A stretch of 63,695 nt of DNA, filler included, from Octopus bimaculoides (Eukaryota): the NCBI RefSeq assembly GCF_001194135.2. It is 6 parts of 5 records of this genome, joined end to end, with 100 filler letters (N's around TTAATTAATTAA, not from the genome) between each part and the next. Parts side by side here need not be neighbours in the genome. Positions count along the whole stretch, not along the records: positions 1 to 22,946 come from NC_068989.1; 5 more parts are not named here. One strand, 5' to 3'. This document shows positions 968 to 22,800 of this stretch, in pieces (the first letter of the stretch is position 1; every line of letters starts with the position of its first letter). The notes below the pieces were generated by a model. It worked only from the letters and a program-made list of their open reading frames with translations, searched no databases and was not told the DNA's origin. The translations under genes were made by a program, and so were the position numbers.

Positions 968-1258
968 AGTGCATGTCTCAATAGTTAGTGTGTTGGGCTC
1001 ACAATCATAAGGTAGTGAGTTCGATTCCTGGACCAGGCTCTTTATTTCACTTTGCTCCAGTTCACTGAACTGTAGAAGTGAGTTGCAACATCACTGGTGC
1101 CAAGCTGCATCATCTTTTTGTCTTTCCCTTGGATAACATCAGTGGCCTGGAGAGGAGATATGCATGGGCGACTGCTGGTCTTCCATAAATAACCTTGAAC
1201 TTGGAGGGGAACATTTCAGGTGCAATCCTGTGGTCATTCATGACTGAAGGGTTTCTTT
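968..1258 (+). mobile_element. tRNA-derived SINE (family B-type head, distinct 3' body)
   Basis: Degenerate A box and B box (gagttcgattcc). The head and the tttatttcac-ttgctccagtt segment are shared with copies at 36909 and 41170-41298. Confidence 0.7.
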
Positions 1259-1365
1259 AATAAAACCAAATAAAGAACCAACAAAATATGGAAGGAGATG
1301 GATTGCAATGATGAGTATTCTGGATACTTGATCAATTCAACTGTTTATTTATTGCATTATATAGT

Positions 1366-2035
1366 AAGGATGGTGAGCTAGCAGAATTGTAAGCATGCCG
1401 GGCAAAATGCTTAGCAGTATTTTGTCTGCCTTTACGTTCTGAGTTCAAATTCCACCAAGGTCGACTTTGCCTTTCATACTTTCAAGGTCAATAAATTAAG
1501 TACCAGATGCATACTGGGTTGATCTAATAGACTGGCCCCATCCCATCAAATTTCAGGTCTTGTGCTTAGAGTAGAAAAGATTACATAGTAAGTGGAAGGT
1601 AGCAAACTAGAAGGATTATTAGCACACTGGAAAAAATGCTTAGCAATATTTCTTTTGTCTCTTATACTCTGAGTTCAAATTTCAACAAGGTTGACTTTGC
1701 CTTTCATCCTTTTGGGGTTAATGAAATAAGTACTAGTCAAGTACAGGAGGGAATGTAGTTGACTAGTCCTGCCCCCACCAGATTTCAGGCCTTGTGTCTG
1801 TAACAGAAATGATTATATAGTAAGTGTGGCAAGCTGGCAAAATCCTTAGCGCATTGGTAAAAATGCTTAGCAGCATTTCTTCTAGCACTTTACATTCTGA
1901 GTTCAAATTCTACTGAGACTGACTTTTCTTTCATACTTTCAGGGTCAATAAAATAAGTGGCAGTTGAGCACTGGGGGAGGGGCAGTGTAATTGATTAGCC
2001 CTTCTCAGCCTTGTGTCAAAATTTGAAACCATTAT
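1366..2035 (+). mobile_element. Three head-to-tail copies of SINE family A (AAGGCGGCGAGCTGGCAGAATCGTTAGC... type)
   Basis: Three ~220-bp units, each with ctgagttcaaat (B box), gactttgcctttcat, ataaaataagtaccag and gccttgtg. Confidence 0.9.
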
Positions 2036-3681: not shown

Positions 3682-3822
3682 TTCGATAATACTGATGCAG
3701 TTATTGTTAAGCCAAAGAACTTGAAGTTTCTTCAACTTCTCCAAATGTTCAATCTTTTTTATCTGGTTGTTGTACAAGTAGAGCTTTGTCAATAAGCAAC
3801 ATTTATCTAGGTTGGAGATTTT
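3682..3822 (-). CDS. LRRC9: LRRC9-like, coding exon 3 (KISNLDKCCLLTKLYLYNNQIKKIEHLEKLKKLQVLWLNNNCISIIE)
   Basis: ccttacAG acceptor and GTAAGT donor, 141 nt, phase 0-0. Two SDS22-like LRRs match the remembered vertebrate LRRC9 segment [29 protein letters not shown]. Confidence 0.93.
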
Positions 3823-4690
3823 CTGTAAGGAGAAAAAACAACAACAACAGTAACAATAACGAAACATTTTAAGATATTCAAGTATTGAGAAATTGCTTAT
3901 TTGCTTTGGAAAGCTTGATGATAAGATGATTAGACAAAGATGTCGTCATGAAGAAAAAGCTTAAATTTGAAACCGTGTTAGCTCAGTAACAAGAAATAGG
4001 CCACAGTATATCAGGTAATCTTGAGTTGATTGTTAGCTAATAGTATTTCAGCTACAATTGTTCAATTGTATGTGAATGGAAATTTCCATGAGTTTCTCAC
4101 CAGAACATGGCTATAAATTGAGATGCCTGCCATGATCAGGCAGAGGCAACAAAGGCATGTTGACCCCTGGTTAAAAGAAATTGTTTGTCTACAATGAACA
4201 TGGAATTTTCCTGAGTCTCACAACATTAAGATATAGTTACAGTTTTTGCAAGCATGCAGTTGTATCTCTAATGATAGATATTTACCTAGACTTCTGGCAT
4301 CGTAAACTCTTGACAAAAACCTCTGTATATTTTTTATGTAAATAAATGATTTCATCAAAAATATTGAACAGGCTTGATTTTATTATGGGTAACAGCATGG
4401 AACCAAGATCAGTCCTACAAGTTATTCTATACCTGTTTAATCAAGCTTCTACAACTTTGAAATACAGGTACGACTCATTGTTGCCAGCAACATGAAATAA
4501 AGTGTCTTGGTCAAGGACATAATATGTCACTGGGAATTGAACTCACTATCTTGCAATTATGAGCTGACTACCCTAACCACTAAGCCATACACCTTCACTA
4601 CCAATGTAATACATCATTTGTAACAACTTCTCTAATGAACAGTCATTTACTCCTTTACTCCCTCTCTTTTCCCCTCTTTGTCCTCTTCTG

Positions 4691-5353
4691 TCATCATCAT
4701 CATTGTTTAACGTCCATCTTCCATGCATACATGGGTAGGACAGTTGACAGGAGCCAGCCAGGTAGAAAAACTACCCTAGGCTACTATCAGTTTTGGCAGG
4801 GATTTTATGGCTGGATGTCCTTCTTAACACCAACCACTCCACAGATTGAACTCAGTGCTTTTTATGTGGTACTAGCACAGGCGAGGTTAGTTTTGGCATG
4901 ATTTTTACAGCTAGATGCCCTTCCAAATGCCAACCACGTTATAGTGTGGACTGGATGCTTTTAATGTGGCACCAGCACTGGCATGGTAACTAAGTAACTT
5001 GTAAGACAAGGAATTATGAGAAGGGTAGGGGCATTTGAGGAGGGGGAACTTGCTTGTGTCAGGGGATGAAAGGTTAGCGCATGACAAAGAGATAGAAGCA
5101 GGTGTCTTGTCATAACAGAGGGAGCATTAGAGGAGGTGATCCAGTGTCAAATGATGAAAGGTTAGAGTGTAACAGAGAAATAGAGAAGCAGAAATAGGTG
5201 AGAGAGACAGAGAAAGAGATGATTATTTATTTAATGTGACACCAGCACTGGCATGGTAACCAAGTAACTTGTAAAACAAGGAATTATGAGATGGGTAGGG
5301 GCATTTGAGGAGGGAGAACTTGCTTGTGTCAGGGGATGAAAGGTTAGAGCATG
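4691..5353 (-). repeat. Interspersed repeat family F (GGATGCCCTTCC...GCCAACCAC core, (GAT)n tail), with an internal ~122-bp direct duplication (4961-5083 and 5231-5353)
   Basis: A homologous copy lies in the opposite orientation at 5530-6110. The duplicated segment is read directly from the sequence. Confidence 0.7.
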
Positions 5354-5529
5354 TTTAAGTGCATCTGTGTATGTACACGTATAGTATTCCTTTACTCTCT
5401 TTCAGCCACCAAGCCCAGTATGTGTACTTATGCAGCACCTTTTATGTTTACTCTTTCTGTATTTCATGTTCACTCTCCCATTCTTTCAAAAAGATGTAAA
5501 GCATGACTGGAGAAATCAATCAATAAAAG

Positions 5530-6231: not shown

Positions 6232-6450
6232 TTTTAATCCACACTGACACAACCAAAGCTCTTGCAGGTTGGGCAGTTGACGTAGTCCATGTGTGCACTC
6301 AATGCATTGCTGTACGATGACCAGTCGTTGAAGGTTTGGGAAATGCTGGAACCCTTGAATGTTTGTCAAGCCTGAGAAAAACATCTCCAGCTCTTGTACA
6401 TATTTTCCTTCTTCCCTGACATGTGCATATGACAACCCATTGGCAGTACA
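6232..6450 (-). CDS. LRRC9: LRRC9-like, coding exon 2 (CTANGLSYAHVREEGKYVQELEMFFSGLTNIQGFQHFPNL...LWLCQCGLK)
   Basis: tctttttcAG acceptor and GTAAGT donor, 219 nt, phase 0-0. The C-x-x-NGLSY and LEMFF-x-G motifs are characteristic of the LRRC9 N-terminus, recalled from the vertebrate protein. Confidence 0.93.
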
Positions 6451-7618: not shown

Positions 7619-7663
7619 CACTTCCTCAAGTTGATGTTCCTCTTTGTAATTCTTCGCGTCCAT
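7619..7663 (-). CDS. LRRC9: LRRC9-like, first coding segment (MDAKNYKEEHQLEEV); the exon spans 7619-7718 including 5' UTR
   Basis: ATG at 7663 in acaATGg context, donor GTG|GTAAGA in phase 0 matching exon 2, and upstream acceptor ttttctcttgtAG at 7719-7720. A non-coding first exon must therefore lie further right. Confidence 0.8.
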
Positions 7664-9356
7664 TGTCGTTCGTCTGATAGTATGAAACTATCGGATGTAT
7701 TCTGTTACCATTGGAACTCTACAAGAGAAAAGATAAGAATGGTAGAGAAGAGAACTAAATATGTTTTGGTATTTAATCACAATGTGTATTTAAAATATTC
7801 TGAATGAAACTCTTCTCAAAGTCGATTCCTATTTTCACCTTTCCTTAAGTATAATTGTTGTAATTGTTTAGCCTAAGTTAACAATGTTTGAGGAGATCTA
7901 TGATCAAAAATACTCCTGCTGTGGCCATTTTTATATTTATTTCAATTACAGTGCATTTAGAACTACATCATCCAAAGTCTCCAGTCTTATTTGTAAAATG
8001 GCACACTGTAATTTGAGGGAAATGTGGCTGTTAATTCCAACAAGTTAAGCAACCACACCAAAGCTCCTCTTATCATCGAAGAAGTAAAAGCCCCTAACGC
8101 AGTCAATTGAACTGCTGAATCAATCAGTGGTCTTCCAGCATACATAATAAATTCATTGAATGTTAGATGGAATACTTGTGGTATTTGTTTTGATTCTCTA
8201 CACCCCGAGTTTAAATCCTGCCAAGGAGAGCTTTGCCTCTATATGGTCTTTAGAAGTATCAAAAATAGCAAGTAATTAAGTTAGGAAAAGACACACTGGC
8301 GATGGTCGTGACTTTTGATTCTCGGTTTGCTTGATCAGAAATGACCAGGGCCTAAACAACAACAACAACAACAACAACGACTATAATAATCATAATGCTA
8401 TCTCACATAGGTACAGGACCATATATTTTTTTGGCGGAGGGACAAAGTCGATGAAATCGCTGCAGTAATCAATCTCAGCAATGTAGAAAACAAAGTAGAT
8501 TTAGGTGAGCTTTCAACTGTGAATGTAAAGGGACACAACTGAGATTTCGACTTTGAATGTAAAGGGACACAACATTTTGTACAATTTTCTCCACAAATGT
8601 CAAATATAAATAACTTCCTGAGCCAACAAGGGAGTTACTATATGGTCGCTAGACCTACTTGAAATAGCAGTAAAATACCTTTCAATCACATTTCACCGTT
8701 TTATAAAGAGACATGTTAAATAATGAGGTTCTGGGTTCATGGTACATATGGCGGCAGTTGAGGTAAATAATACCTTGTATCACAAGTTTTTTTTTTAAAA
8801 ACAACAACAACAACAATATATCTCCACCACTACCAACTTTTAGCAAAGGTATAAAGCTATATATTTGGTAAAGAAGAACCATGATTAATTTAATCGACTA
8901 GTACTTTATGTTACCAACTCCTGAAGTACGAAGGGCAAAGATGAGCCTAACTGCCTTCTAATGCTTTATACTAACAACAACAATAAACAATAAAAGTATT
9001 TCTTACGTAGCATGGTGTCGTTTGATTTGAAACAGATATATATATATGTATATATATATATAGAGAGAGGACAGTAGTAGAAAATAGTTATGGTGTGATG
9101 TTCATTGTATTAGTTTTAAAAGCGTTAGGTCTATAAGCCATATGTCGCTACATAACAGCGAGCTGAATTGAAGTAGGATTTATAAAAGTAGGGAAATAGG
9201 ATGTTGCAACGTTCCTGCCTCGCCCAGAACTATTATTACTACTAATACTATTAGCTGTGATAAACAAACAGATTTTCTTATAGTTTTCCGACAAGTGTTA
9301 AGGGAATATATATTTGAATTAGTTCCAGCCATGAGTAACTGAAATCGCTGCTTTTG

Positions 9357-9418
9357 ATTGGATAATTAGTAGTCATAGCAACAAGCCAAAACATATGCCA
9401 ATAGTTGTCCTTAACAAC
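9357..9418. promoter_or_regulatory. Putative bidirectional promoter core: two RFX X-boxes plus two CCAAT boxes
   Basis: GTAGTCATAGCAAC (9369-9382) fits GTHNYYATRRNAAC exactly. GTTGTCCTTAACAAC (9404-9418) fits with a 3-nt spacer. ATTGG at 9357-9361 and CCAAT at 9398-9402 face opposite directions. The cluster lies between the divergent LRRC9-like and TBCA-like genes. Confidence 0.65.
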
Positions 9419-9888
9419 GTTGAAGAGAGAGACAGAGAGATATATATAAAGAGGAATGGATAGATAGAAAGTAAGAGATGAAAGAGAATGTATGTCAGAG
9501 GGAGGGAGAGAGAGAGAAAGCCAAAAAGACTTAATGGACGGACATACTAACTTGGAAAGAAAAGCTGCCGCATCACCGAACTAGTTTTAATTTTTCAAAA
9601 AAAGTTTAAAACCAGGCTGTTAGTAAGCTTTCCTTTCGACTATAAAATATTTAAAATATTTTATTTATACATTTGTTTAAAAGGCCAGAAAGAGATCCTA
9701 ATTTACCAAAAAAACTTGAAAACAAAACAAAAAAAGAGTAAAGCGCTTTAATATTATAAAAGCGAAAGTAAAAATATACCTAAAGCAAAAAATAAGAACA
9801 ACAGAAAAATAACTTTAAAATTTTACAGTAGAAACAAAGGGAATAATTGTAAAAGATAAAAAAAAAAGAAAAAAAGAAATACGCCACA

Positions 9889-10224
9889 ATGAACAGTGAT
9901 ATCGTAAAGGAATTAGAGGTTAAAGCCGGTGTTTTACAGCAATTCATCCATGAAAAATCATCCTATGAAGTTGAACTGAAACAAGATATGCAGAGACTTG
10001 ATAAAATGAAAGAAACGAACGAAGATGAACGAGACATTGCCGAACAAGAAGACATGATGCGTGAGGCAAAAAATATGATATTCGAAACTATGCGAAGATT
10101 GGAGGTGGCTTACGATGATTTGAAAACCTTCCATGATAAAGTTCAACAAGAACTCAGTGAAATTCCGTCCTTTTTGGCTGCTCAAGAAGTTCTCTTGTCT
10201 GCCCAAAACATTTTAAATCATTAA
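9889..10224 (+). CDS. TBCA: Tubulin-specific chaperone A (cofactor A)-like protein, intronless and divergent, 111 aa
   Basis: Intact ORF, colinear without gaps with remembered human TBCA over the first ~78 aa (K-x-GV, EK-x-x-YE-x-E-x-KQ, KM, DI-x-x-Q, E-x-x-x-MI, RRLE-x-AY-x-DL). Roughly 30% identity by eye. Confidence 0.85.
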   Translation: MNSDIVKELEVKAGVLQQFIHEKSSYEVELKQDMQRLDKMKETNEDERDIAEQEDMMREAKNMIFETMRRLEVAYDDLKTFHDKVQQELSEIPSFLAAQEVLLSAQNILNH

Positions 10225-10677: not shown

Positions 10678-11985
10678 AAAACGGTGAGCCGACAGAATCG
10701 TCAAGCGCTCCGGACAAAATGCTTAGCTGCATTTTATCCTGTTCTTTACGTGCTGAGCTCAAATCCCACAGAGGTTAACTTTTCCTTTCGGGGTCGATGA
10801 AATAAGTACCAGTTGAGTACTCGAGTAGATGTCATAGATACCCCTTCACCTCAAAATTGCTGGCCTTGTGCCAAAATCAGCAAGAATCATTATTGTTAAG
10901 ACACCGAGAAAAGGCGGTAAGCTGGCACAGTCGTTACCGCGCCGGGAAAAATGGTTAGCGACATTTCTTCTGACTTTGTTCTGAGATCAAATGCCACCGG
11001 TGTCAATAAAATAAGTACCAGATGAATATTGGAGTCGATGTAATCGACATGCACCCTCTCCCACAATTGCTGATCTTGTACCAAAATTTGAAACCATTAT
11101 GAAGACCGGGGATGGGGAGGGCTGGCAGAATCGTTAACGCACCAGGCAACATGCTTAGCGGCATTTCTTTCGGCTCTTTCCGTGCTGAACAAGAATCCTA
11201 CCGAAATCATATTTACTTCCAAACTTTCAGGGTCGATAAAAAAAGTATAAGTCGAGTACTGGGGCCGATTTAACCAACTTGCCACCTCCTCTCATAATTG
11301 CTGGCCTTGTGCCAAAAGTTGAAACATGATTGTTAATAACAAAATATGCCTTGTGATATTTAGTTACGTTCCTTTACCATTTGATTGCTATCGAATTCAC
11401 TTGATATCTTTTCCCAGAAGATTAAATAAAACATCGGTTAAATATTCTGGATGATACGATCGGTGGATTGAAAGAAATGTTAGTGCGCCTTGTAGTAGCT
11501 CTTTCTTTCAGAGTTCGAATTTCGTCAAGGCCTATTTTTCTTTTCCTCTTTCCAGGGTCGATAAAAGAAGGTATCAGTCAAATGCTGTGTTCGATGTAAT
11601 CAGCTTTCTCCTTCCTTCAAAACAGCTGGTCTTGTGTCTGAATTAGAAATTATTATTAACAAAATACTTCGCAGGGGTTAGTCACGTCTCTTTAGGTTCT
11701 GATTTGAAATTTCAGCGTGGATGAGTTTGCTATTCTCTAGTGGATAAAATAAAGTACTAGTTAAATGCGATGTCACCTCGCCTTTCAGCCTTCTGCAAAT
11801 CTGGCTGGTTTGATATTCCTACAAAGGATCTTGGTTCTGAATGGAATTATAGCGAGAAACGAAAAATTTCTCCTTCACCTTTTCCCAAGAATATATAAAA
11901 AGGTACAAATCAGGTACTGAAGTCGAAATAATTCATCGCCACCCACAATTTTTAGCTTTGTGTCTAATTTGAAATCATTATCATC
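10678..11985 (+). mobile_element. Cluster of about six same-orientation SINE family A copies (10678-10893, 10911-11100, 11101-11335, ~11455-11660, ~11670-11790, ~11805-11985)
   Basis: Recurring gtcgataaaataagtaccag / gccttgtgccaaaatttgaaac modules separated by ATT-rich tails; the copies further right are more degenerate. Confidence 0.85.
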
Positions 11986-12284
11986 ANNNNNNNNNNNNNN
12001 NNNNNNNNNNNNNNNNNNNNNNNNNNNNNNNNNNNNNNNNNNNNNNNNNNNNNNNNNNNNNNNNNNNNNNNNNNNNNNNNNNNNNNNNNNNNNNNNNNNN
12101 NNNNNNNNNNNNNNNNNNNNNNNNNNNNNNNNNNNNNNNNNNNNNNNNNNNNNNNNNNNNNNNNNNNNNNNNNNNNNNNNNNNNNNNNNNNNNNNNNNNN
12201 NNNNNNNNNNNNNNNNNNNNNNNNNNNNNNNNNNNNNNNNNNNNNNNNNNNNNNNNNNNNNNNNNNNNNNNNNNNNNNNNNNNN

Positions 12285-12490
12285 GCACCTCCTCTAATGG
12301 GTCTTATCAGAAACAGCTTTCATTAAAATTACCTGATGGATTCTCAAGCGTGACCAGCTGCGACTCTGGATATTATACAACCATCTTGCTCTTGGTCTGC
12401 TCTTAGGTTTCATACCGGTTGGCTTAGCTTGAAGAATCTCTCTACGGCATGCTGACCACATGTCAGGAACTATAAAAGAAGACATTTTTA
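12285..12490 (-). mobile_element. RTE-clade (Rex3/Expander-like) LINE 3' end fragment
   Basis: ILQAKPTGMKPKSRPRARWLYNI...W-x-RL-x-I matches the RTE C-terminal motif G-x-RPRGRPR-x-RW-x-D. Confidence 0.7.
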
Positions 12491-13329: not shown

Positions 13330-13550
13330 GACCAAGCTGTCGCAGACGACGCTCGGCACGCACGCCGGGAAAAAAAGCTTAACGGCATTTCGTCCGTCAT
13401 TACGTTCTGAATTCAAATTCCGCTGAGGTCGACCTTGCCTTTCATCCTTTCGGGGTCGATAAAATAAATATCAGTTGAACACTGAATCGATGTAATTGAC
13501 ATACTTCCTCTCCCGAAATTGCTGGCCTTGTGCCAACATTTGAAATCATT
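13330..13550 (+). mobile_element. SINE family A copy; other copies at 14226-14453, 56236-56440, 58132-58312 (minus), 59200-59410 and 61026-61245
   Basis: Same diagnostic modules as the arrays above. Confidence 0.9.
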
Positions 13551-13574
13551 ACTATTTTTATTTTATTTATTCGC

Positions 13575-14180
13575 TTAATTCCTGATTTATCTATGTCTAT
13601 GTCACGTCTCAGTTCCATACTGCAGCTTAAAGACGCAACACTTTCCTCAACAGATGAGCTATTCCAAGTATTGCTGCCATCTGAATACTTCCTAAGAAAT
13701 TTGGTATTAGCAGCGTTTGAAGCCAGAATATTGCTCTTTTTGAGATGGTCCCAAGTGCACCGATCACAATAGGTACCATATTTACTTTTGAGACTCTATG
13801 GATTCTTTTCACTTCCAATCCTAAGTCTTGGTAATTTTCGAATTTCTTGTCCTTTGTCTTCACAATATTCTGGTCTGCAGGTATATCTACACCGATGCAG
13901 GTCCATTGTTTAGACTCCTTCAGTTGGAGAGTGATATCTGGTCGGTGGCGCTGCAACTTTTTGTCTGTGTATATTGGTATATCCCATCTGATCATTCTCT
14001 GCTACTGGCAAAGGTTGGTGCTCATACCACTTGTTGGAACATTCTAGTCAATACATATTCGCACTGCTACTTTGTCATCGCATTTTATTTACCTCTTTTG
14101 GTCTAACTTTGAATATTCACTAATTATATGTTTATTACAGATGACTTTCCATAGTCTACACAAAGGTGATACTGCTGTCT
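13575..14180 (-). mobile_element. R4/Dong-clade non-LTR retrotransposon 3' fragment (restriction-like endonuclease)
   Basis: RWDIPIYTDKKLQRHRPDI (PD motif), KFENYQDL and VPIVIGALG...AAILG-x-AHLLRKVL; the upstream zinc-knuckle remnant is frameshifted. Confidence 0.85.
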
Positions 14181-14453
14181 TATCAATGCTACATTTGATT
14201 GAGTCAGTTCGTAAAACTAGTCCTTAGGCAGCAAGAATCCATCCTTCCGTGCCCTTCGAGATTGCAGAATCGTTAGCACGTTGGAGGAAATGCTTAGCGG
14301 TATTTCGCCCGTCGTTACGTTCTGAGTTCAAAATTCCGCTGAGATTGACTGTGCCTTTCATCCTTTCGGGATCGATAAATTAAGTACCAGTGAAACTCTG
14401 GGGTCAATGTAAACGACTAGTCCCCTCCGCTCAAATTTCAGGCCTTGTACCTA

Positions 14454-14858
14454 TACTCTTTTACTTGTTCCAGTCATTAGACTGAGGCCATGCTAGAGCA
14501 CCGCCTTTAGTCGAGCAAATCGACCCCAGGACTTATTCTTTGGAAGCCTAGTACTTATTCTATCGGTCTGTTTTGCCGAACCGCTAAGTTACGGGGACGT
14601 AAACACACCAGCATCGGTTGTCAAGCGATGTTGGGGAGACAAACATATACACACACGCACATACATACACATATATACATATATATACATATATACGACG
14701 GGCTTCTTTCAGTTTCCGTCTACCAAATCCACTCACAAGGCTTTGGTCGGCCCGAGGCTATAGTAGAAGACACTTGCCCAAGGTGCCACGCAGTGGGACT
14801 GAACCCAGAACCATTTGGTTGGTAAGAAAGCTACTTACCACACAGCCACTCCCACGCC
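14454..14858 (-). mobile_element. Full-length composite CORE-type tRNA-SINE (family C; probably the Octopus OR group) with an internal TA/TG microsatellite
   Basis: tRNA-like head, CORE-like accttgggcaagtgtctt and (GAGTAAAA)n tail. Further copies at 36460-36904 (+) and 43506-43889 (-); partial copies at 155-355, 34625-34760, 53940-54102 and 57760-57953. Confidence 0.88.
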
Positions 14859-14986: not shown

Positions 14987-15900
14987 TCTCTTTATCACAG
15001 GTTTTGTTGGAGCTCCTGGAGTGTTGCATACGTAGCAGGCTTACTACCTATAGCCTACGGTACCATGCTAATCGTTCTTTTCAGCTATCTAATACTTTCC
15101 TGATTATTTTAGCCGTGCCAAGGAGGCAAACCTTTTGCAACAGTTCTACTGGGCACTTTATTCCAATTTCGTTTATATTCCTCTCGAAGCCTTCTGATAC
15201 TGTTCCCAAGAACCCAACAATAATTGACACTATCTTCGCCTTCTTCATTTTCCATAGCCGGGCTAATTCGTACTTAAAAGGTTACTATCTTTTCGCCTTC
15301 ATTTTTTACTATTCGTAGGTCAAAGGCGCATGCCACGTCAACTATATAGCATATGTGATGCACCATGACCACCACCACTAGGTCCGGTCTGTTATGCTCT
15401 AGCACCTGATATGTTTGGATTGGGAAATCCCAGAGAATATTGATCGTCTCCGACTCTGTCGCTCTCTGCGGTTTGTGCTCATACCACATCTTACCTCTCT
15501 CTAGCCTCCACTTTTCGCACAGTTTCCAATGTAGAACGTTCGCTACCTGATGATGTCGCCACAACTTGTAGTGGTTTTGGGCAAGTCTAGGGCATTCGTT
15601 TGTGATATGGGCAATGGTTTTGTCCACTCTATTACAGGTGCAGCACAACAGAGACAGCTCATTCCACAGATTGACCCTCCAGTTATCATGGCCAAAGTTT
15701 GGTCTTGCACTGCCAGTATAGTGCTCTCCGTCTCTTGTTTTAGTGTGCCATTCTTCAGCCAATCCCGCTTGTTTTATCCAGCAATTTCTGTTGGGACTAC
15801 ATGGAATTCATTGTGTAGCCCTTGTCGCATAATTCTTCTTCATGTCCTTTTTGTACTTATTCCTTTGTATATAGAGAGAGGGACAGAGAGATGGAACTGT
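14987..15900 (-). mobile_element. Second R4/Dong-clade LINE 3' fragment (CCHC knuckle plus RLE), ending at an (AAT)n/(AAC)n tract
   Basis: C-x-x-C...TIAHITNEC, RHHQVANVLHWKLC, WYEHKP, ILWDFPIQT...HNRPD and LQKVCLLGTAKIIRKVL; the 3' end abuts the microsatellite at 14869-14985. Confidence 0.88.
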
Positions 15901-16694
15901 TGTGGCAGGCAAAAGATTGTAGTAGACTACGTTTGGTCAGTTCTTGTGGATTGTAGTGGGATATTTGAAGGAAAGGAAATTCTTGCGGTAAAGGTTTGTG
16001 TGTATATTTTTAAAGAAAAATGTACTTTGTCGTTACATGTTTTAAAAGAAAAAGAACTTTGTTAACTTTTGTTAACTGTGATGTTAACTGGTGGAAAAGA
16101 AAAGAAAAGAAAGAACTTTGCTAACTCTTGTTAAATGGTTGAAAAGAAAAGAGAGAACTTTGTTGTTACATGTTGTTCAAAGAAAAGAAAAACAAAGAAG
16201 TAAAAGAACTTTTAATTGACTTGATATACGAATTCTGATTGTAAACTTTTGATTACGTTAAATGCTTGCATGCGCTATTGTTACATGTGTTATTTCAGAA
16301 TTATTGTTATGCAATGTTTTGTATTGTGATGTAAAGAAAGAAAAGTTAGTTTCACTACGCAACGTATGGTCCGTGTTATTTCTTCCTCCTTGCCTGTTGT
16401 CATCGTTNNNNNNNNNNNNNNNNNNNNNNNNNNNNNNNNNNNNNNNNNNNNNNNNNNNNNNNNNNNNNNNNNNNNNNNNNNNNNNNNNNNNNNNNNNNNN
16501 NNNNNNNNNNNNNNNNNNNNNNNNNNNNNNNNNNNNNNNNNNNNNNNNNNNNNNNNNNNNNNNNNNNNNNNNNNNNNNNNNNNNNNNNNNNNNNNNNNNN
16601 NNNNNNNNNNNNNNNNNNNNNNNNNNNNNNNNNNNNNNNNNNNNNNNNNNNNNNNNNNNNNNNNNNNNNNNNNNNNNNNNNNNNNNNNNNNNNN

Positions 16695-20266: not shown

Positions 20267-21551
20267 TTGGGTCATCCCATAAATAATGCAGTTTTTTATA
20301 CTTCTTTTATTTTTCAAAATTAAGAATAACAAAGTTCTTTTTTAATCTAAAATATACTATTGAAACGCATGAAGTAGTGTTTTGACCTATCCATTCTTAT
20401 TTGTTTACCACATACATACATACATGCATNNNNNNNNNNNNNNNNNNNNNNNNNNNNNNNNNNNNNNNNNNNNNNNNNNNNNNNNNNNNNNNNNNNNNNN
20501 NNNNNNNNNNNNNNNNNNNNNNNNNNNNNNNNNNNNNNNNNNNNNNNNNNNNNNNNNNNNNNNNNNNNNNNNNNNNNNNNNNNNNNNNNNNNNNNNNNNN
20601 NNNNNNNNNNNNNNNNNNNNNNNNNNNNNNNNNNNNNNNNNNNNNNNNNNNNNNNNNNNNNNNNNNNNNNNNNNNNNNNNNNNNNNNNNNNNNNNNNNNN
20701 NNNNNNNNNNNNNNNNNNNNNNNNNNNNNNNNNCTTTTAGCGCTGACTTAAGCCGCTCAAGCTGTTGCAGTAGATCTCCTTTGTTATCGTTTGGTTTGGG
20801 TTTAAAAGTTCAAAGTGGACTAAACCTTTCATATCCCACTAAACAGATAACAACTCTTTACGTAGATGAAGACCTTCTTTAGCCTGGGATGCCAGTGTTT
20901 CTCCTTTCCCTACTCAGTCTTGGACATTTGACATTTTTATAGAGAACCTATTTCTCATCACCAGTCACTATTCGGTCCAAAAGTGGTTCATTCTTGAGAC
21001 GTAACAGCAAAGAAGAGCACACATTCACTCTCCGCGCGTGATTAGACACGAAAAGTTTGTAAGGAACCCATTGACTATTTGCTGACTTTTTCGATGGCAC
21101 GCAGGTATCGATGAATCGTTGAATGACCAAATCCAAGCTTCTCAGCTAGTTCCTCAACGATTTTGTTCCACCAGTGTTTGCAGGATGTGCTCGTTGAGCT
21201 CTACAGATCTTCTAGGACGAGGTTCGTCTTTTAGGCTGCAGTTGACACTGGCTTACGCTTATTGTCCGATACCCATATACTGCATTAATATTCCGCGCAT
21301 TTTCAGTTGCGTTGTTGCCTTTATTGAACTCATAACGCAAAATATGCCGAATACGTTCCTTTAGCACTTCCATTATAACTTTGAAGAAATAACTGTTAAA
21401 ATCGAACTGCACTCTTGAAAACTTGCACTATAAGTACAAGGTAAAATTACTACCTGCTTTTATAGCAAGTTGATGTAGGTTGTTTATCCCGTTCGCTCCG
21501 ATCTTTAGTTCATGCATCTAAGAAAACCGCATTATTCATAAGATGATCCAA
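20267..21551 (-). mobile_element. Full-length-sized (1285 bp) mariner with both TIRs and TA flanks, degraded and partly in an N gap
   Basis: TA-TTGGGTCATCCCATAAATAATGCAGTTTT ... AAAACCGCATTATTCATAAGATGATCCAA-TA; transposase remnants RHILRYEFNKG, WVPYKL and RIVTGDEK. Confidence 0.9.
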
Positions 21552-21557
21552 TACTCA

Positions 21558-21594
<37 letters not shown>

Positions 21595-22001
21595 NNNNNN
21601 NNNNNNNNNNNNNNNNNNNNNNNNNNNNNNNNNNNNNNNNNNNNNNNNNNNNNNNNNNNNNNNNNNNNNNNNNNNNNNNNNNNNNNNNNNNNNNNNNNNN
21701 NNNNNNNNNNNNNNNNNNNNNNNNNNNNNNNNNNNNNNNNNNNNNNNNNNNNNNNNNNNNNNNNNNNNNNNNNNNNNNNNNNNNNNNNNNNNNNNNNNNN
21801 NNNNNNNNNNNNNNNNNNNNNNNNNNNNNNNNNNNNNNNNNNNNNNNNNNNNNNNNNNNNNNNNNNNNNNNNNNNNNNNNNNNNNNNNNNNNNNNNNNNN
21901 NNNNNNNNNNNNNNNNNNNNNNNNNNNNNNNNNNNNNNNNNNNNNNNNNNNNNNNNNNNNNNNNNNNNNNNNNNNNNNNNNNNNNNNNNNNNNNNNNNNN
22001 N

Positions 22002-22800
22002 GGTACGATGAGTAAATTGTTACCATTTTATATTTTTAATTTCCAGCATGCGCATTGTTTGTTTTTGATTTTGTCGACTACACAGTATAGTTAGGTCAGT
22101 TGGGCACCGTTTGTGAGAAAAACAGCATCATGACGCAATTCACTCTGCCAGAAATTTGGAAATGACATGCTGTACTGCTTGGCATTCGCACCGGTAGCTC
22201 CAATACGAACATTTCAGTGTTTGGGTGTCAATCTGAGTGTTTGCCGTGTCCACAAAACGTACCGGGAGTGATAAACATCCAGTCAGCATCATAGTGTTTG
22301 GAGTGATGGCGACGTTATGCCTCCATTTATGTTCCCACAATGGCCTCAGACTCAACACGGAGGGTTACATCAAGTGCCTGGATGAAGTAATGCTGCCCTG
22401 GGTGTAGAGGGTAGCTGCTGGAAGACCCTATGTCTGACAACAGGATTCTGCACCATGCCACAGAAGAAAGAGAACCCAGTCATTGCTTTCAGACAATTTC
22501 TGCGACCACATCATCCTTAACATTTGGCTACCTAATCCGCCAGACTACAACCAACCTTGATTATTATGTGTGGGGCGCAGTTGAGCGAAAGAGCAACAAA
22601 ATTCCTTGTAACACCAAAGATAAATTGAAGGCAAGAATTTTGACATTTACCGACTTAAACAAGGAGACCGTCCAGAAGAGTTGCAGGAGCTTCCGAAGTC
22701 GTCTGGAGGCCGTGGTTGAAGCCAATGGTGATTTTATTGGATAAATTTACTCTTTAGTATTTCAAGATATTTAAGGATTTTTATGTAATTTTGGTAAATA
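22002..22800 (+). mobile_element. Internally deleted Tc1/mariner element of the DD37D (maT) type
   Basis: KHPVSIIVFGV...QQDSAPCH...WLPNPPDYN-x-LDYYVWGAVE. There are 37 residues between the second and third D after correcting one +1 frameshift. End coordinates are approximate. Confidence 0.8.

What the first reader, a model, noticed from the sequence alone, without database searches (positions are those of the whole stretch)
9357..9418. Compact bidirectional RFX/NF-Y promoter between LRRC9 and the TBCA-like gene
Seen: within 62 bp, a perfect 14-bp X-box (GTAGTCATAGCAAC), a second near-palindromic X-box (GTTGTCCTTAACAAC) and two CCAAT boxes on opposite strands. The cluster is ~470 bp upstream of the TBCA-like ATG and ~1.65 kb upstream of the LRRC9 ATG exon. 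Established: RFX X-boxes mark ciliary gene promoters across animals and often co-occur with NF-Y sites. Inference: one RFX-driven element fires both genes.
Basis: partly seen in the sequence, partly recalled or inferred. Interest (0 to 1): 0.7.

Follow-up and report, generated by a model that had tools for sequence, protein, structure and literature searches.

The report
Conserved double RFX-site promoter, octopus TBCA/LRRC9
A 62-bp block between two head-to-head octopus genes carries two binding sites for RFX, the cilia-gene regulator; a distant relative has the same pair in the same place, so the block is probably a real but ordinary promoter element, not yet shown to drive both genes.

Summary
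All four motifs are at the stated coordinates: ATTGG 9357-9361, X-box 1 GTAGTCATAGCAAC 9369-9382, CCAAT 9398-9402, X-box 2 GTTGTCCTTAACAAC 9404-9418. "Perfect" holds only against the degenerate nematode consensus.

One X-box alone is not significant. A pair within 60 bp in the 1 kb upstream of the TBCA ATG has simulated P about 0.006. O. vulgaris keeps both X-boxes and the ATTGG, but the second CCAAT is CCAGT there.

The decisive evidence is a distant, unidentified animal (L009, relative L002) with no alignable DNA. It has the same LRR gene head-to-head with TBCA and two strong X-boxes 235-290 bp upstream of the TBCA ATG (P about 0.003). Nine TBCA loci from at least five other animal species have none.

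In octopus and L009 the LRR gene's ATG exon follows a strong splice acceptor, so a non-coding first exon lies upstream, possibly at the module. No transcription start site could be mapped.

The gene is probably the ordinary cephalopod TBCA, fast-evolving in octopus. The LRRC9 label could not be tested.

Verdict:
- RFX element: supported.
- NF-Y part: weak.
- Bidirectional firing: plausible but untested.
- Novelty: new member of a known kind.

The parts
9357..9361 (-). CCAAT box (ATTGG on the + strand; reads CCAATCA on the minus strand) at the LRR-gene-side edge of the module, 7 bp from X-box 1
   Evidence: Identical in O. vulgaris. L009 has an analogous CCAATTGG 3 bp from its outer X-box on the same side. 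L002 has none.
9369..9382 (+). X-box 1, GTAGTCATAGCAAC: a strong right half-site (AGCAAC) and a degenerate left half
   Evidence: Only match to GTHNYYATRRNAAC in the window, 0.18 expected. Identical in O. vulgaris. Its reverse complement GTTGCTATGACTAC differs at 2 of 12 half-site bases from GTTGCTATGGTTAC of L009 and L002.
9398..9402 (+). Second CCAAT, 1 bp upstream of X-box 2; probably not functional
   Evidence: It is CCAGT in O. vulgaris. No counterpart next to the inner X-box in L009 or L002.
9404..9418 (+). X-box 2, GTTGTCCTTAACAAC: a near-palindrome with a 3-bp spacer and one mismatch per half-site to GTTRCY
   Evidence: Matches GYTNYY N1-3 RRNRAC on both strands. Identical in O. vulgaris. 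Differs at 4 of 12 half-site bases from GTTGCCTTGGTAAC of L009.
9889..10224 (+). Intronless coding sequence of tubulin-folding cofactor A (111 aa), the gene nearest the module
   Evidence: ORF. Pfam TBCA PF02970, E = 5e-19, covering 97 of 99 profile positions. 97% identical to O. vulgaris CAI9727818.1, named 'tubulin-specific chaperone A'.
7619..7663 (-). First coding exon of the LRR (LRRC9-like) gene, MDAKNYKEEHQLEEV, ending at a GTAAGA donor
   Evidence: The counterpart in L009 is MDLLEKTKYEEIFEDIQLQDL followed by GTAATT at 5431..5369.
7719..7753 (-). Polypyrimidine tract plus AG (ctcttctctaccattcttatcttttctcttgtag): a predicted 3' splice site about 55 nt upstream of the LRR-gene ATG. It implies a non-coding exon 1 further upstream.
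   Evidence: Conserved in O. vulgaris with 3 differences in the pyrimidine tract and the AG intact. L009 has the same layout, with an even stronger tract. Inference only; there is no RNA evidence.
6232..6450 (-). Second coding exon of the LRR gene (CTANGLSY...LWLCQCGLK)
   Evidence: Pfam LRR_4. The orthologous exon in L009 at 1287..1123 is 51% identical, E = 3e-15.
3682..3822 (-). Third coding exon of the LRR gene (KISNLDKCC...VLWLNNNCISIIE), SDS22-type leucine-rich repeats
7704..7717 (-). Proximal X-box-like site GTTCCAATGGTAAC, 40-53 bp upstream of the LRR-gene ATG and just inside the predicted exon. It is the basis of the rival 'separate promoter' reading.
   Evidence: One mismatch to GTHNYYATRRNAAC. 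The class is not above chance, 5 found against 5.4 expected. Half-sites are kept in O. vulgaris, GTTCCAAAGGTAAC. L009 has a GTTGCT half-site at a similar offset.
9443..9451 (+). TATA-like TATATAAAG, 25 bp downstream of X-box 2; a candidate core element for TBCA
   Evidence: The TATAAAG part is kept in O. vulgaris. Weak evidence in an AT-rich, microsatellite-rich region.
9001..9006 (-). Candidate splice donor (ctac|GTAAGA) that could end a non-coding LRR-gene exon 1 starting near the module
   Evidence: It lies inside a 48-bp run of perfect identity with O. vulgaris, 8973-9020. Inference only.
9821..9828 (+). Candidate splice acceptor (ttttacag) 60 nt upstream of the TBCA ATG, with a candidate donor GTAAGA at 9471-9476
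   Evidence: Both are conserved in O. vulgaris. Inference only.

Best explanation
The block is a genuine RFX-responsive promoter module. It holds two X-boxes 21 bp apart, each able to bind an RFX dimer, with a CCAAT box on the outer, LRR-gene side.

The module and the gene pairing predate the split between the octopus lineage and the L009/L002 lineage.

Most likely mechanism: RFX factors bound to the two X-boxes recruit the transcription machinery. TBCA transcription then starts within roughly 100 bp on the plus side. Transcription of a short non-coding first exon of the LRR gene starts on the minus side, and that exon is spliced over a 1.3-4 kb intron onto the ATG exon.

Shown: the motifs, their conservation, the gene pairing and the splice-acceptor layout. 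Inferred: RFX binding, both start sites, and hence bidirectional firing.
For: 1. The motifs are verified. A pair within 60 bp in the 1 kb upstream of the ATG has P = 0.0057 by simulation.
2. O. vulgaris keeps both X-boxes and the ATTGG unchanged. The block has 1 difference against a mean of 6.5 per 62 bp. Bin 9300-9400 is the most conserved intergenic 100-bp bin, 0.97, equal to the coding sequence.
3. L009 carries the closest TBCA outside the octopus cluster (43% identity). It has the orthologous LRR exon on the opposite strand (51% identity, 3e-15).
4. L009 has GTTGCCTTGGTAAC at 9712-9725 and GTTGCTATGGTTAC at 9755-9768, 235-290 bp upstream of the TBCA ATG. These are the only matches to the strict GTNRCC N0-3 RGYAAC in 20 kb, with pair P = 0.0027. 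L002 has the same pair.
5. The window and L009 share no nucleotide-level similarity. The recurrence is therefore not residual neutral conservation.
6. Between L002 and L009 (82% identical in the coding sequence), the two X-boxes are the most perfectly conserved upstream pieces.
7. By the published comparative criterion (at most 4 of 12 half-site bases different, position within 500 bp; PMC2375033), both octopus X-boxes count as conserved, at 2/12 and 4/12.
8. Nine TBCA loci from at least five other animal species have no X-box within the upstream sequence available, up to 1 kb. The X-boxes therefore go with the LRR-gene linkage, not with TBCA as such.
9. In octopus and in L009 the LRR-gene ATG exon follows a strong polypyrimidine-AG acceptor 55-60 nt upstream. 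The LRR gene must therefore start further upstream.
10. No other full match to the three published X-box consensus patterns lies between the acceptor and the module in octopus.
11. A conserved L002/L009 block with aligned GT donor candidates lies 60-250 bp from the X-boxes on the LRR-gene side.
12. Mouse Lrrc9 is listed in a flagellar proteome and in a comparative ciliome set (PMC3069013). It also appears in a Stentor basal-body regeneration cluster.
Against: - No transcript or start-site data were available.
- The coding starts are 2.2 kb apart in octopus and about 4.6 kb apart in L009, more than in classical bidirectional promoters.
- X-box 1 and X-box 2 each fail the strict classical consensus.
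- Octopus-to-O. vulgaris conservation discriminates poorly: 5.8% of intergenic 62-bp windows are equally conserved.
- The second CCAAT is lost in O. vulgaris, and L002 has no adjacent CCAAT.
- A proximal X-box-like site exists next to the LRR-gene ATG.
- The L009/L002 organisms are unidentified.
- The LRRC9 identity of the LRR gene was not verified.
- The simulated P values are post hoc, for patterns chosen after seeing the sites.
Confidence: 0.55

Rival explanations
1. The double X-box is a one-directional TBCA promoter. The LRR gene uses its own promoter elsewhere, for example near the proximal X-box-like site at 7704-7717 or at an unrecognised upstream exon unrelated to the module.
For: The module is 235-520 bp from the TBCA ATG in all lineages, but 1.7 kb (octopus) and 4.3 kb (L009) from the LRR-gene ATG. 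A proximal GTTCCAATGGTAAC keeps its half-sites in O. vulgaris. L009 has a GTTGCT half-site at a similar offset.
Against: TBCA loci elsewhere in animals lack X-boxes, so the module tracks the LRR-gene linkage. The proximal site class is not above chance, 5 against 5.4 expected, and it lies downstream of a strong predicted acceptor. The recurring CCAAT and a conserved block sit on the LRR-gene side of the module.
Confidence: 0.2
2. The module belongs to the ciliary LRR gene only, as the promoter of its non-coding exon 1. TBCA, a housekeeping chaperone, is driven by a separate core promoter closer to its ATG.
For: LRRC9 appears in ciliome lists while TBCA is not a known RFX target (one search found no paper linking Tbca and Rfx2). 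X-boxes are absent from TBCA loci of other animals. The region between the module and the TBCA ATG is long and A-rich and could hold its own start site.
Against: The module keeps a short, similar distance to the TBCA ATG across lineages, while its distance to the LRR coding exons varies 2.5-fold. Conserved sequence continues from X-box B towards TBCA in L002 and L009.
Confidence: 0.12
3. The motifs are a chance cluster in AT-rich intergenic DNA, or part of a repeat, with no regulatory role.
For: A single degenerate X-box match is expected in about 12-27% of comparable sequences. Laurencon et al. found that presence of an X-box alone is not predictive. Background identity with O. vulgaris is about 90%.
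Against: A double X-box recurs independently at the same syntenic position in a lineage with no alignable DNA. The joint probability is of order 1e-5. The block has no other copy in the window or in L001, and there is no Rfam or tRNA hit.
Confidence: 0.05

Closest known systems
X-box promoters of ciliary genes bound by RFX factors (DAF-19 in C. elegans, dRFX in Drosophila, RFX1-4 in vertebrates, cRFXa in choanoflagellates)
   Same: An inverted repeat of GTTRCY-type half-sites with a 1-3 bp spacer, lying within 1 kb upstream of the ATG. It is conserved in sequence and position between divergent species, the criterion that best predicted true dRFX targets (PMC2375033). The consensus is GTNRCC N0-3 RGYAAC (PMC10530576). 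One flanking gene is a ciliome candidate.
   Different: There are two X-boxes in tandem, 21-29 bp apart, rather than one. The nearest gene is a tubulin-folding cofactor, not a classical ciliary structural gene. The octopus copies are degenerate relative to the near-perfect boxes of L009 and L002. No binding or expression data exist for any cephalopod.
MHC class II S-X-Y module (RFX5 complex on the X box with NF-Y on the Y/CCAAT box); from my own knowledge
   Same: An X-box with an inverted CCAAT (ATTGG) close by on one side.
   Different: No S box or X2/CRE element was looked for or seen. Here the CCAAT is dispensable in at least one lineage (L002). The resemblance is superficial.
Bidirectional promoters of head-to-head gene pairs
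   Same: Divergent gene pair with conserved linkage across a deep split. A single compact factor-binding cluster lies between them. Palindromic sites can act in both directions.
   Different: The classical definition needs start sites less than 1 kb apart, and these are unknown here. The coding starts are 2.2-4.6 kb apart. No CpG island is present; the region is 29-34% G+C.

Membership tests
RFX X-box (dimeric RFX binding site) | Match to a published X-box consensus | tested here: met
   X-box 1 matches GTHNYYATRRNAAC. X-box 2 matches GYTNYY N1-3 RRNRAC. Both fail the stricter GTNRCC N0-3 RGYAAC. The L009 and L002 counterparts pass the strict pattern.
RFX X-box (dimeric RFX binding site) | Located within about 1 kb upstream of the start codon of the regulated gene | tested here: met
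   471-520 bp upstream of the TBCA ATG in octopus, 233-289 bp in L009 and 251-309 bp in L002. For the LRR gene the distance to the ATG is 1.7 kb, so the feature is met there only if a non-coding exon 1 exists.
RFX X-box (dimeric RFX binding site) | Conserved in sequence and position between divergent species (at most 4 of 12 half-site bases different, position within 500 bp; Laurencon et al. 2007) | tested here: met
   X-box 1 against the L009 B box: 2 of 12. X-box 2 against the L009 A box: 4 of 12. Positions differ by less than 300 bp. Both are identical in O. vulgaris.
RFX X-box (dimeric RFX binding site) | Bound by an RFX protein, with target expression dependent on RFX | not testable with these tools
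   Needs EMSA, DAP-seq or ChIP, plus reporter or knock-down experiments.
NF-Y CCAAT box | CCAAT pentamer with favourable flanks (RRCCAATSR, consensus from my own knowledge) | tested here: inconclusive
   Site 9357-9361 reads tatCCAATca on the minus strand: good 3' flank, poor 5' flank. Site 9398-9402 reads tgCCAATag: poor flanks.
NF-Y CCAAT box | Conservation across species | tested here: inconclusive
   The first site is kept in O. vulgaris and paralleled by CCAATTGG in L009. The second is CCAGT in O. vulgaris. L002 has none adjacent.
NF-Y CCAAT box | Position about -60 to -100 from a transcription start site | not testable with these tools
   No start-site data.
Bidirectional promoter | Two genes head-to-head on opposite strands | tested here: met
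   LRR gene on the minus strand, TBCA on the plus strand. The same arrangement holds in O. vulgaris and in L009.
Bidirectional promoter | Transcription start sites less than about 1 kb apart | not testable with these tools
   There are only indirect hints: acceptors upstream of the LRR-gene ATG exon and candidate donors near the module.
Bidirectional promoter | Correlated expression of the two genes | not testable with these tools
   No expression data.
TBCA (tubulin-binding cofactor A, PF02970) | Full-length match to the family profile above the curated cut-off | tested here: met
   68.8 bits against a cut-off of 30.3, covering profile positions 3-99 of 99. 228 TBCA relatives found at E <= 0.001.
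LRRC9 orthologue | Best reciprocal similarity to LRRC9 over the long multi-LRR protein | tested here: inconclusive
   Only three N-terminal exons lie in the window. The word-index search returned nothing. The PDB holds no LRRC9 chain, and the best hits are generic SDS22-type LRR proteins. The O. vulgaris model is at least 983 aa with LRR_4, LRR_8 and LRR_9. Similarity to human LRRC9 rests on my memory of that sequence only.

The most novel reading that the evidence does not exclude
In the cephalopod lineage the housekeeping tubulin chaperone TBCA was captured head-to-head by a ciliary LRR gene. Since then it has been transcribed from a shared tandem X-box promoter, putting tubulin-folding capacity under the ciliogenic RFX programme.

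The two box types appear in opposite order and orientation relative to TBCA in octopus and in L009/L002. That could mean the module was inverted without loss of function, as expected for a truly bidirectional element.
Probability: 0.3. Interest if true: 0.45.

Novelty: new member of a known kind. Interest (0 to 1): 0.3.

Why it matters
RFX control of ciliary genes through X-boxes is well established from choanoflagellates to mammals, so another X-box promoter is expected rather than surprising.

The modest added value has three parts:
- It gives a concrete, comparatively validated RFX target module in cephalopods, where cis-regulation is almost unstudied.
- It suggests a lineage-specific coupling of a tubulin-folding cofactor to a ciliary gene.
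- It offers a compact 60-bp element that could serve as a ciliated-cell or testis reporter driver in octopus or squid.

Tried and rejected
- **Word-index homologue searches.** The search with TBCA found only its own cluster. The search with the 88-aa LRR N-terminus found nothing. LRRC9 loci from other animals could therefore not be fetched, and the question of whether LRRC9 promoters generally carry X-boxes stayed open.
- **PDB search with the LRR N-terminus** gave only generic LRR proteins.
- **Literature.** No paper links LRRC9 to RFX in a meaningful way, none links Tbca to Rfx2, and none mentions the run accessions of L002-L009. The organism behind L009 and L002 remains unknown.
- **Transcript test.** I asked whether the L002-L006 contigs are transcripts that would mark a start site. 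They are collinear genomic unitigs that break at homopolymers, so they are uninformative.
- **Structured RNA or tRNA-derived repeat at the site:** none found.
- **Repeat origin of the block:** no second copy in the window or in L001.
- **Special ciliary TBCA paralogue.** I considered this and rejected it as the default. P0003 and P0152 are closer to insect TBCAs (47-50%) than to the octopus protein (43-44%). The octopus gene therefore looks like a fast-evolving orthologue.
- **Inversion of the X-box module.** The octopus minus strand aligns better to the L009 plus strand. However, the CCAAT sits on the LRR-gene side in both lineages, which does not fit a simple inversion. I left this as a passing note.
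- **Pfam on four long ORFs downstream of TBCA:** nothing found.

Full report
**What is in the sequence**

- ATTGG at 9357-9361, which is CCAAT on the minus strand.
- GTAGTCATAGCAAC at 9369-9382 (X-box 1).
- CCAAT at 9398-9402.
- GTTGTCCTTAACAAC at 9404-9418 (X-box 2).

The TBCA-type ORF starts at 9889, 471 bp downstream. The ATG of the LRR gene is at 7663 on the minus strand, 1,694 bp away.

"Perfect X-box" needs qualifying.
- X-box 1 fits the degenerate nematode-type consensus GTHNYYATRRNAAC. It is the only such match in the window, with 0.18 expected, and 12 of 100 shuffles have at least one match.
- X-box 1 fails the classical GTNRCC N0-3 RGYAAC. Only its right half (AGCAAC, reverse complement GTTGCT) is a good RFX monomer site of the GTTRCY type (PMC10530576).
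- X-box 2 fits the Drosophila-type GYTNYY N1-3 RRNRAC used by Laurencon et al. (PMC2375033), with one mismatch per half-site to GTTRCY and a 3-bp spacer.

CCAAT is under-represented in the window, 33 found against 56 expected.

**Is it more than chance?**

One degenerate X-box is not. As Laurencon et al. noted, presence alone does not predict regulation.

I simulated the 1 kb upstream of the ATG with a second-order Markov model of the locus. A pair of matches to any of the three published consensus patterns within 60 bp occurs in 0.57% of 20,000 simulations. This is suggestive, but post hoc.

**The genes**

The 111-aa ORF at 9889-10224 is a full-length TBCA domain: PF02970, 5e-19, profile positions 3-99 of 99. 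It is 97% identical to O. vulgaris CAI9727818.1, "tubulin-specific chaperone A". The window is therefore from a congener of O. vulgaris. The two loci are about 90% identical at the DNA level and collinear.

On the minus strand I reconstructed three coding exons of a long LRR gene:
- 7663-7619, MDAKNYKEEHQLEEV followed by GTAAGA.
- 6450-6232.
- 3822-3682.

The O. vulgaris model of this gene has at least 983 residues with LRR_4, LRR_8 and LRR_9 hits. I could not verify the LRRC9 label. The word-index search returned nothing, and the PDB holds only generic SDS22-type LRR relatives. The resemblance to human LRRC9 rests on my memory of that sequence.

Mouse Lrrc9 is listed among candidate cilia genes, from a flagellar proteome and a comparative-genomics set (PMC3069013). 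It also appears in a basal-body gene cluster in regenerating Stentor.

**Close comparison: O. vulgaris (L001)**

Both X-boxes and the ATTGG are identical. The second CCAAT is CCAGT.

| Measure | Value |
|---|---|
| Intergenic identity | 0.896 |
| Differences in the 62-bp block | 1 |
| Mean differences per 62-bp intergenic window | 6.5 |
| Intergenic 62-bp windows at least as conserved | 5.8% |
| Identity of bin 9300-9400 | 0.97 (the most conserved intergenic 100-bp bin, equal to the coding sequence) |

This is consistent with constraint but not decisive at such a short evolutionary distance.

**Distant comparison: the decisive evidence**

A full HMMER scan of 1.84 billion representative proteins gave one clearly closest relative outside the octopus cluster, P0003 (44% identity). 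A profile search added P0152 (43%). I fetched their DNA.

L009 is a 290-kb ENA contig of unknown organism.
- TBCA is on the plus strand with its ATG at 10001.
- The orthologue of LRR exon 2 is on the minus strand at 1287-1123 (51% identity, 3e-15). The head-to-head pairing is therefore conserved.
- No nucleotide-level similarity to the window remains. Only the two coding regions match by tblastx.

Between the two genes, 235-290 bp upstream of the TBCA ATG, L009 reads CCAATTGGctcGTTGCCTTGGTAAC, then 29 bp, then GTTGCTATGGTTAC. These are the only two matches to the strict classical consensus in 20 kb. The simulated probability of such a pair is 0.27%.

L002-L006 are Logan contigs of a related species, 82% identical to L009 in the coding sequence. 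They carry GTTGCCTTGGCAAC and GTTGCTATGGTTAC at the corresponding place.

In a global alignment of the two upstream regions, most of the sequence is at 40-60% identity. The two X-boxes stand out as the most perfectly conserved pieces.

By Laurencon's comparative criterion (at most 4 of 12 half-site bases different, position within 500 bp), octopus X-box 1 scores 2/12 against GTTGCTATGGTTAC. X-box 2 scores 4/12 against GTTGCCTTGGTAAC. Both count as conserved.

Taking octopus and L009 as independent lineages, the joint chance probability is of order 1e-5.

**Controls**

TBCA loci from other animals have no match to any of the three consensus patterns within the upstream sequence available, up to 1 kb:
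- L007, dipteran-like.
- L010-L012, beetle-like.
- L013, Exaiptasia.
- L014, Drosophila hydei.
- L016-L018, unidentified.

The only hit in L016-L018 lies inside the coding sequence. L008 and L015 were also scanned without a hit, but hold only about 230 and 106 bp upstream. The X-boxes therefore go with the LRR-gene linkage rather than with TBCA as such.

P0003 and P0152 are closer to insect TBCAs (47-50%) than to the octopus protein. The window gene is thus most simply the cephalopod TBCA orthologue, fast-evolving in octopus, and not a dedicated paralogue.

**Does the element serve both genes?**

This could not be tested directly, because no transcript data were accessible. The indirect evidence is as follows.

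- In octopus the LRR-gene ATG exon is preceded, 55 nt upstream, by an excellent 3' splice site, ctcttctctaccattcttatcttttctcttgtag, with the AG at 7720-7719. It is conserved in O. vulgaris.
- In L009 I located the counterpart ATG exon at 5431-5369, MDLLEKTKYEEIFEDIQLQDL followed by GTAATT. It is likewise preceded, about 60 nt upstream, by ttttcttttttttttttattttctttttaag.
- In both lineages the LRR gene therefore very probably has a non-coding exon 1 further upstream.
- In octopus the module holds the only full matches to the three published X-box consensus patterns between that acceptor and TBCA.
- On the LRR-gene side of the X-boxes, L002 and L009 share a conserved block (L009 9536-9648). They also share aligned GT donor candidates: AT|GTGAGTAAT in L002 and AG|GTGTGTAAT in L009.
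- Octopus has a candidate donor ctac|GTAAGA at 9006, inside a 48-bp run of perfect identity with O. vulgaris.

These observations fit a short untranslated exon 1 starting next to the module. They are inference, not proof.

The evidence against:
- The coding starts are 2.2 kb (octopus) and about 4.6 kb (L009) apart.
- A proximal X-box-like site, GTTCCAATGGTAAC at 7704-7717, lies 40-53 bp from the LRR-gene ATG. Its motif class is not above chance, 5 found against 5.4 expected. Its half-sites are kept in O. vulgaris, and L009 has a GTTGCT half-site at a similar offset.

**NF-Y**

Only the CCAAT at the LRR-gene-side edge recurs. It is ATTGG, 7 bp from X-box 1, in both octopuses. It is CCAATTGG, 3 bp from the outer X-box, in L009.

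L002 has none adjacent, and the second octopus CCAAT is lost in O. vulgaris.

That module uses the RFX5 complex and a different spacing. I rate NF-Y involvement as possible for the first site and unlikely for the second.

**Mechanism proposed**

Two RFX dimers bind the tandem X-boxes, possibly assisted by a CCAAT-binding factor on the LRR-gene side.

TBCA transcription starts shortly downstream of X-box 2. A TATA-like TATATAAAG lies at 9443-9451. A candidate 5'-UTR intron runs from the GTAAGA at 9471 to the ttttacag acceptor at 9821-9828, and all of these are conserved in O. vulgaris.

LRR-gene transcription starts on the other strand, and its exon 1 is spliced to the ATG exon.

My confidence by step:
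- The X-boxes are functional RFX sites: about 0.75.
- They act on TBCA: about 0.65.
- They act on both genes: about 0.5.

**Comparison with known systems, and novelty**

This works like, and passes the testable membership criteria of, the RFX X-box promoters known from nematodes, flies, vertebrates and choanoflagellates.

It differs in three ways:
- The two boxes are in tandem.
- A tubulin chaperone is the nearest gene.
- The module lies in a conserved head-to-head pair.

It is a new member of a known kind, and a specialist would not be surprised by it. The most novel reading still open is a lineage-specific capture of TBCA by a ciliary gene's RFX promoter, conserved since before the split between the octopus lineage and the L009/L002 lineage.

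**Verdict**

- Observation: confirmed.
- Interpretation: partly supported.
- Interest: 0.3.

Noticed in passing
window 7704-7717 (minus strand); L009 about 5474-5479 (minus strand): Both lineages have an RFX half-site about 40-50 bp upstream of the LRR-gene ATG, just inside the predicted exon after the acceptor. Octopus has GTTCCAATGGTAAC and L009 has GTTGCT. This could be a second, proximal RFX input or a coincidence.
   Followed up: partly
window 9369-9418 compared with L009 9712-9768: The two X-box types appear in opposite order and orientation relative to TBCA. Octopus has the AT-spacer box first, with AGCAAC on the plus strand. L009 and L002 have it second, on the minus strand. The octopus minus strand aligns better to the L009 plus strand. 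The CCAAT is on the LRR-gene side in both lineages, which does not fit a simple inversion.
   Followed up: partly
window 9889-10224; proteins P0001, P0003, P0152: Octopus TBCA is unusually divergent. The L009 and L002 TBCAs are closer to insect TBCAs (47-50%) than to the octopus protein (43-44%). The coding sequence is intronless in octopus, L009 and L002, while another animal (L018) has an intron after residue 82.
   Followed up: partly
window 4480-4491 and 5256-5268 (introns of the LRR gene): Two matches to the strict X-box consensus lie inside the LRR gene. GTTGCCAGCAAC has a zero spacer and is TTTGCCAGCAAC in O. vulgaris. GTAACCAAGTAAC is GTAGCCAAGTAAC in O. vulgaris. Their significance is unknown.
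   Followed up: partly
window 9255-9270: TAAACAAACA (TGTTTGTTTA on the minus strand) lies about 100 bp from the module on the LRR-gene side. From memory it matches the core of the FOXJ1/HFH-4 consensus. It is only partly kept in O. vulgaris, as TAAACAGGT.
   Followed up: no
window 1375-1958, 10712-11324, 13360-13571, 14288-14448; also 14454-14852: There are interspersed repeat families. A unit of about 200 bp occurs at least 8 times in the window and several times in L001 at 73-80% identity. A unit of about 400 bp (14454-14852) has three copies in L001 at 88-91% identity but is absent from the syntenic place there. No tRNA-like part was detected.
   Followed up: no
window about 11987-12286, 16410-16690, 20430-20740, 21590-21960: Runs of N (assembly gaps), often flanked by dinucleotide microsatellites. 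Microsatellites (AT)n and (AG)n also flank the promoter block at 9036-9070 and 9420-9520.
   Followed up: no
window 13627-13995 (-), 15274-15762 (-), 22430-22744 (+): Long ORFs downstream of TBCA that look like transposon remnants to me, but have no Pfam hit. Their nature is not established.
   Followed up: partly
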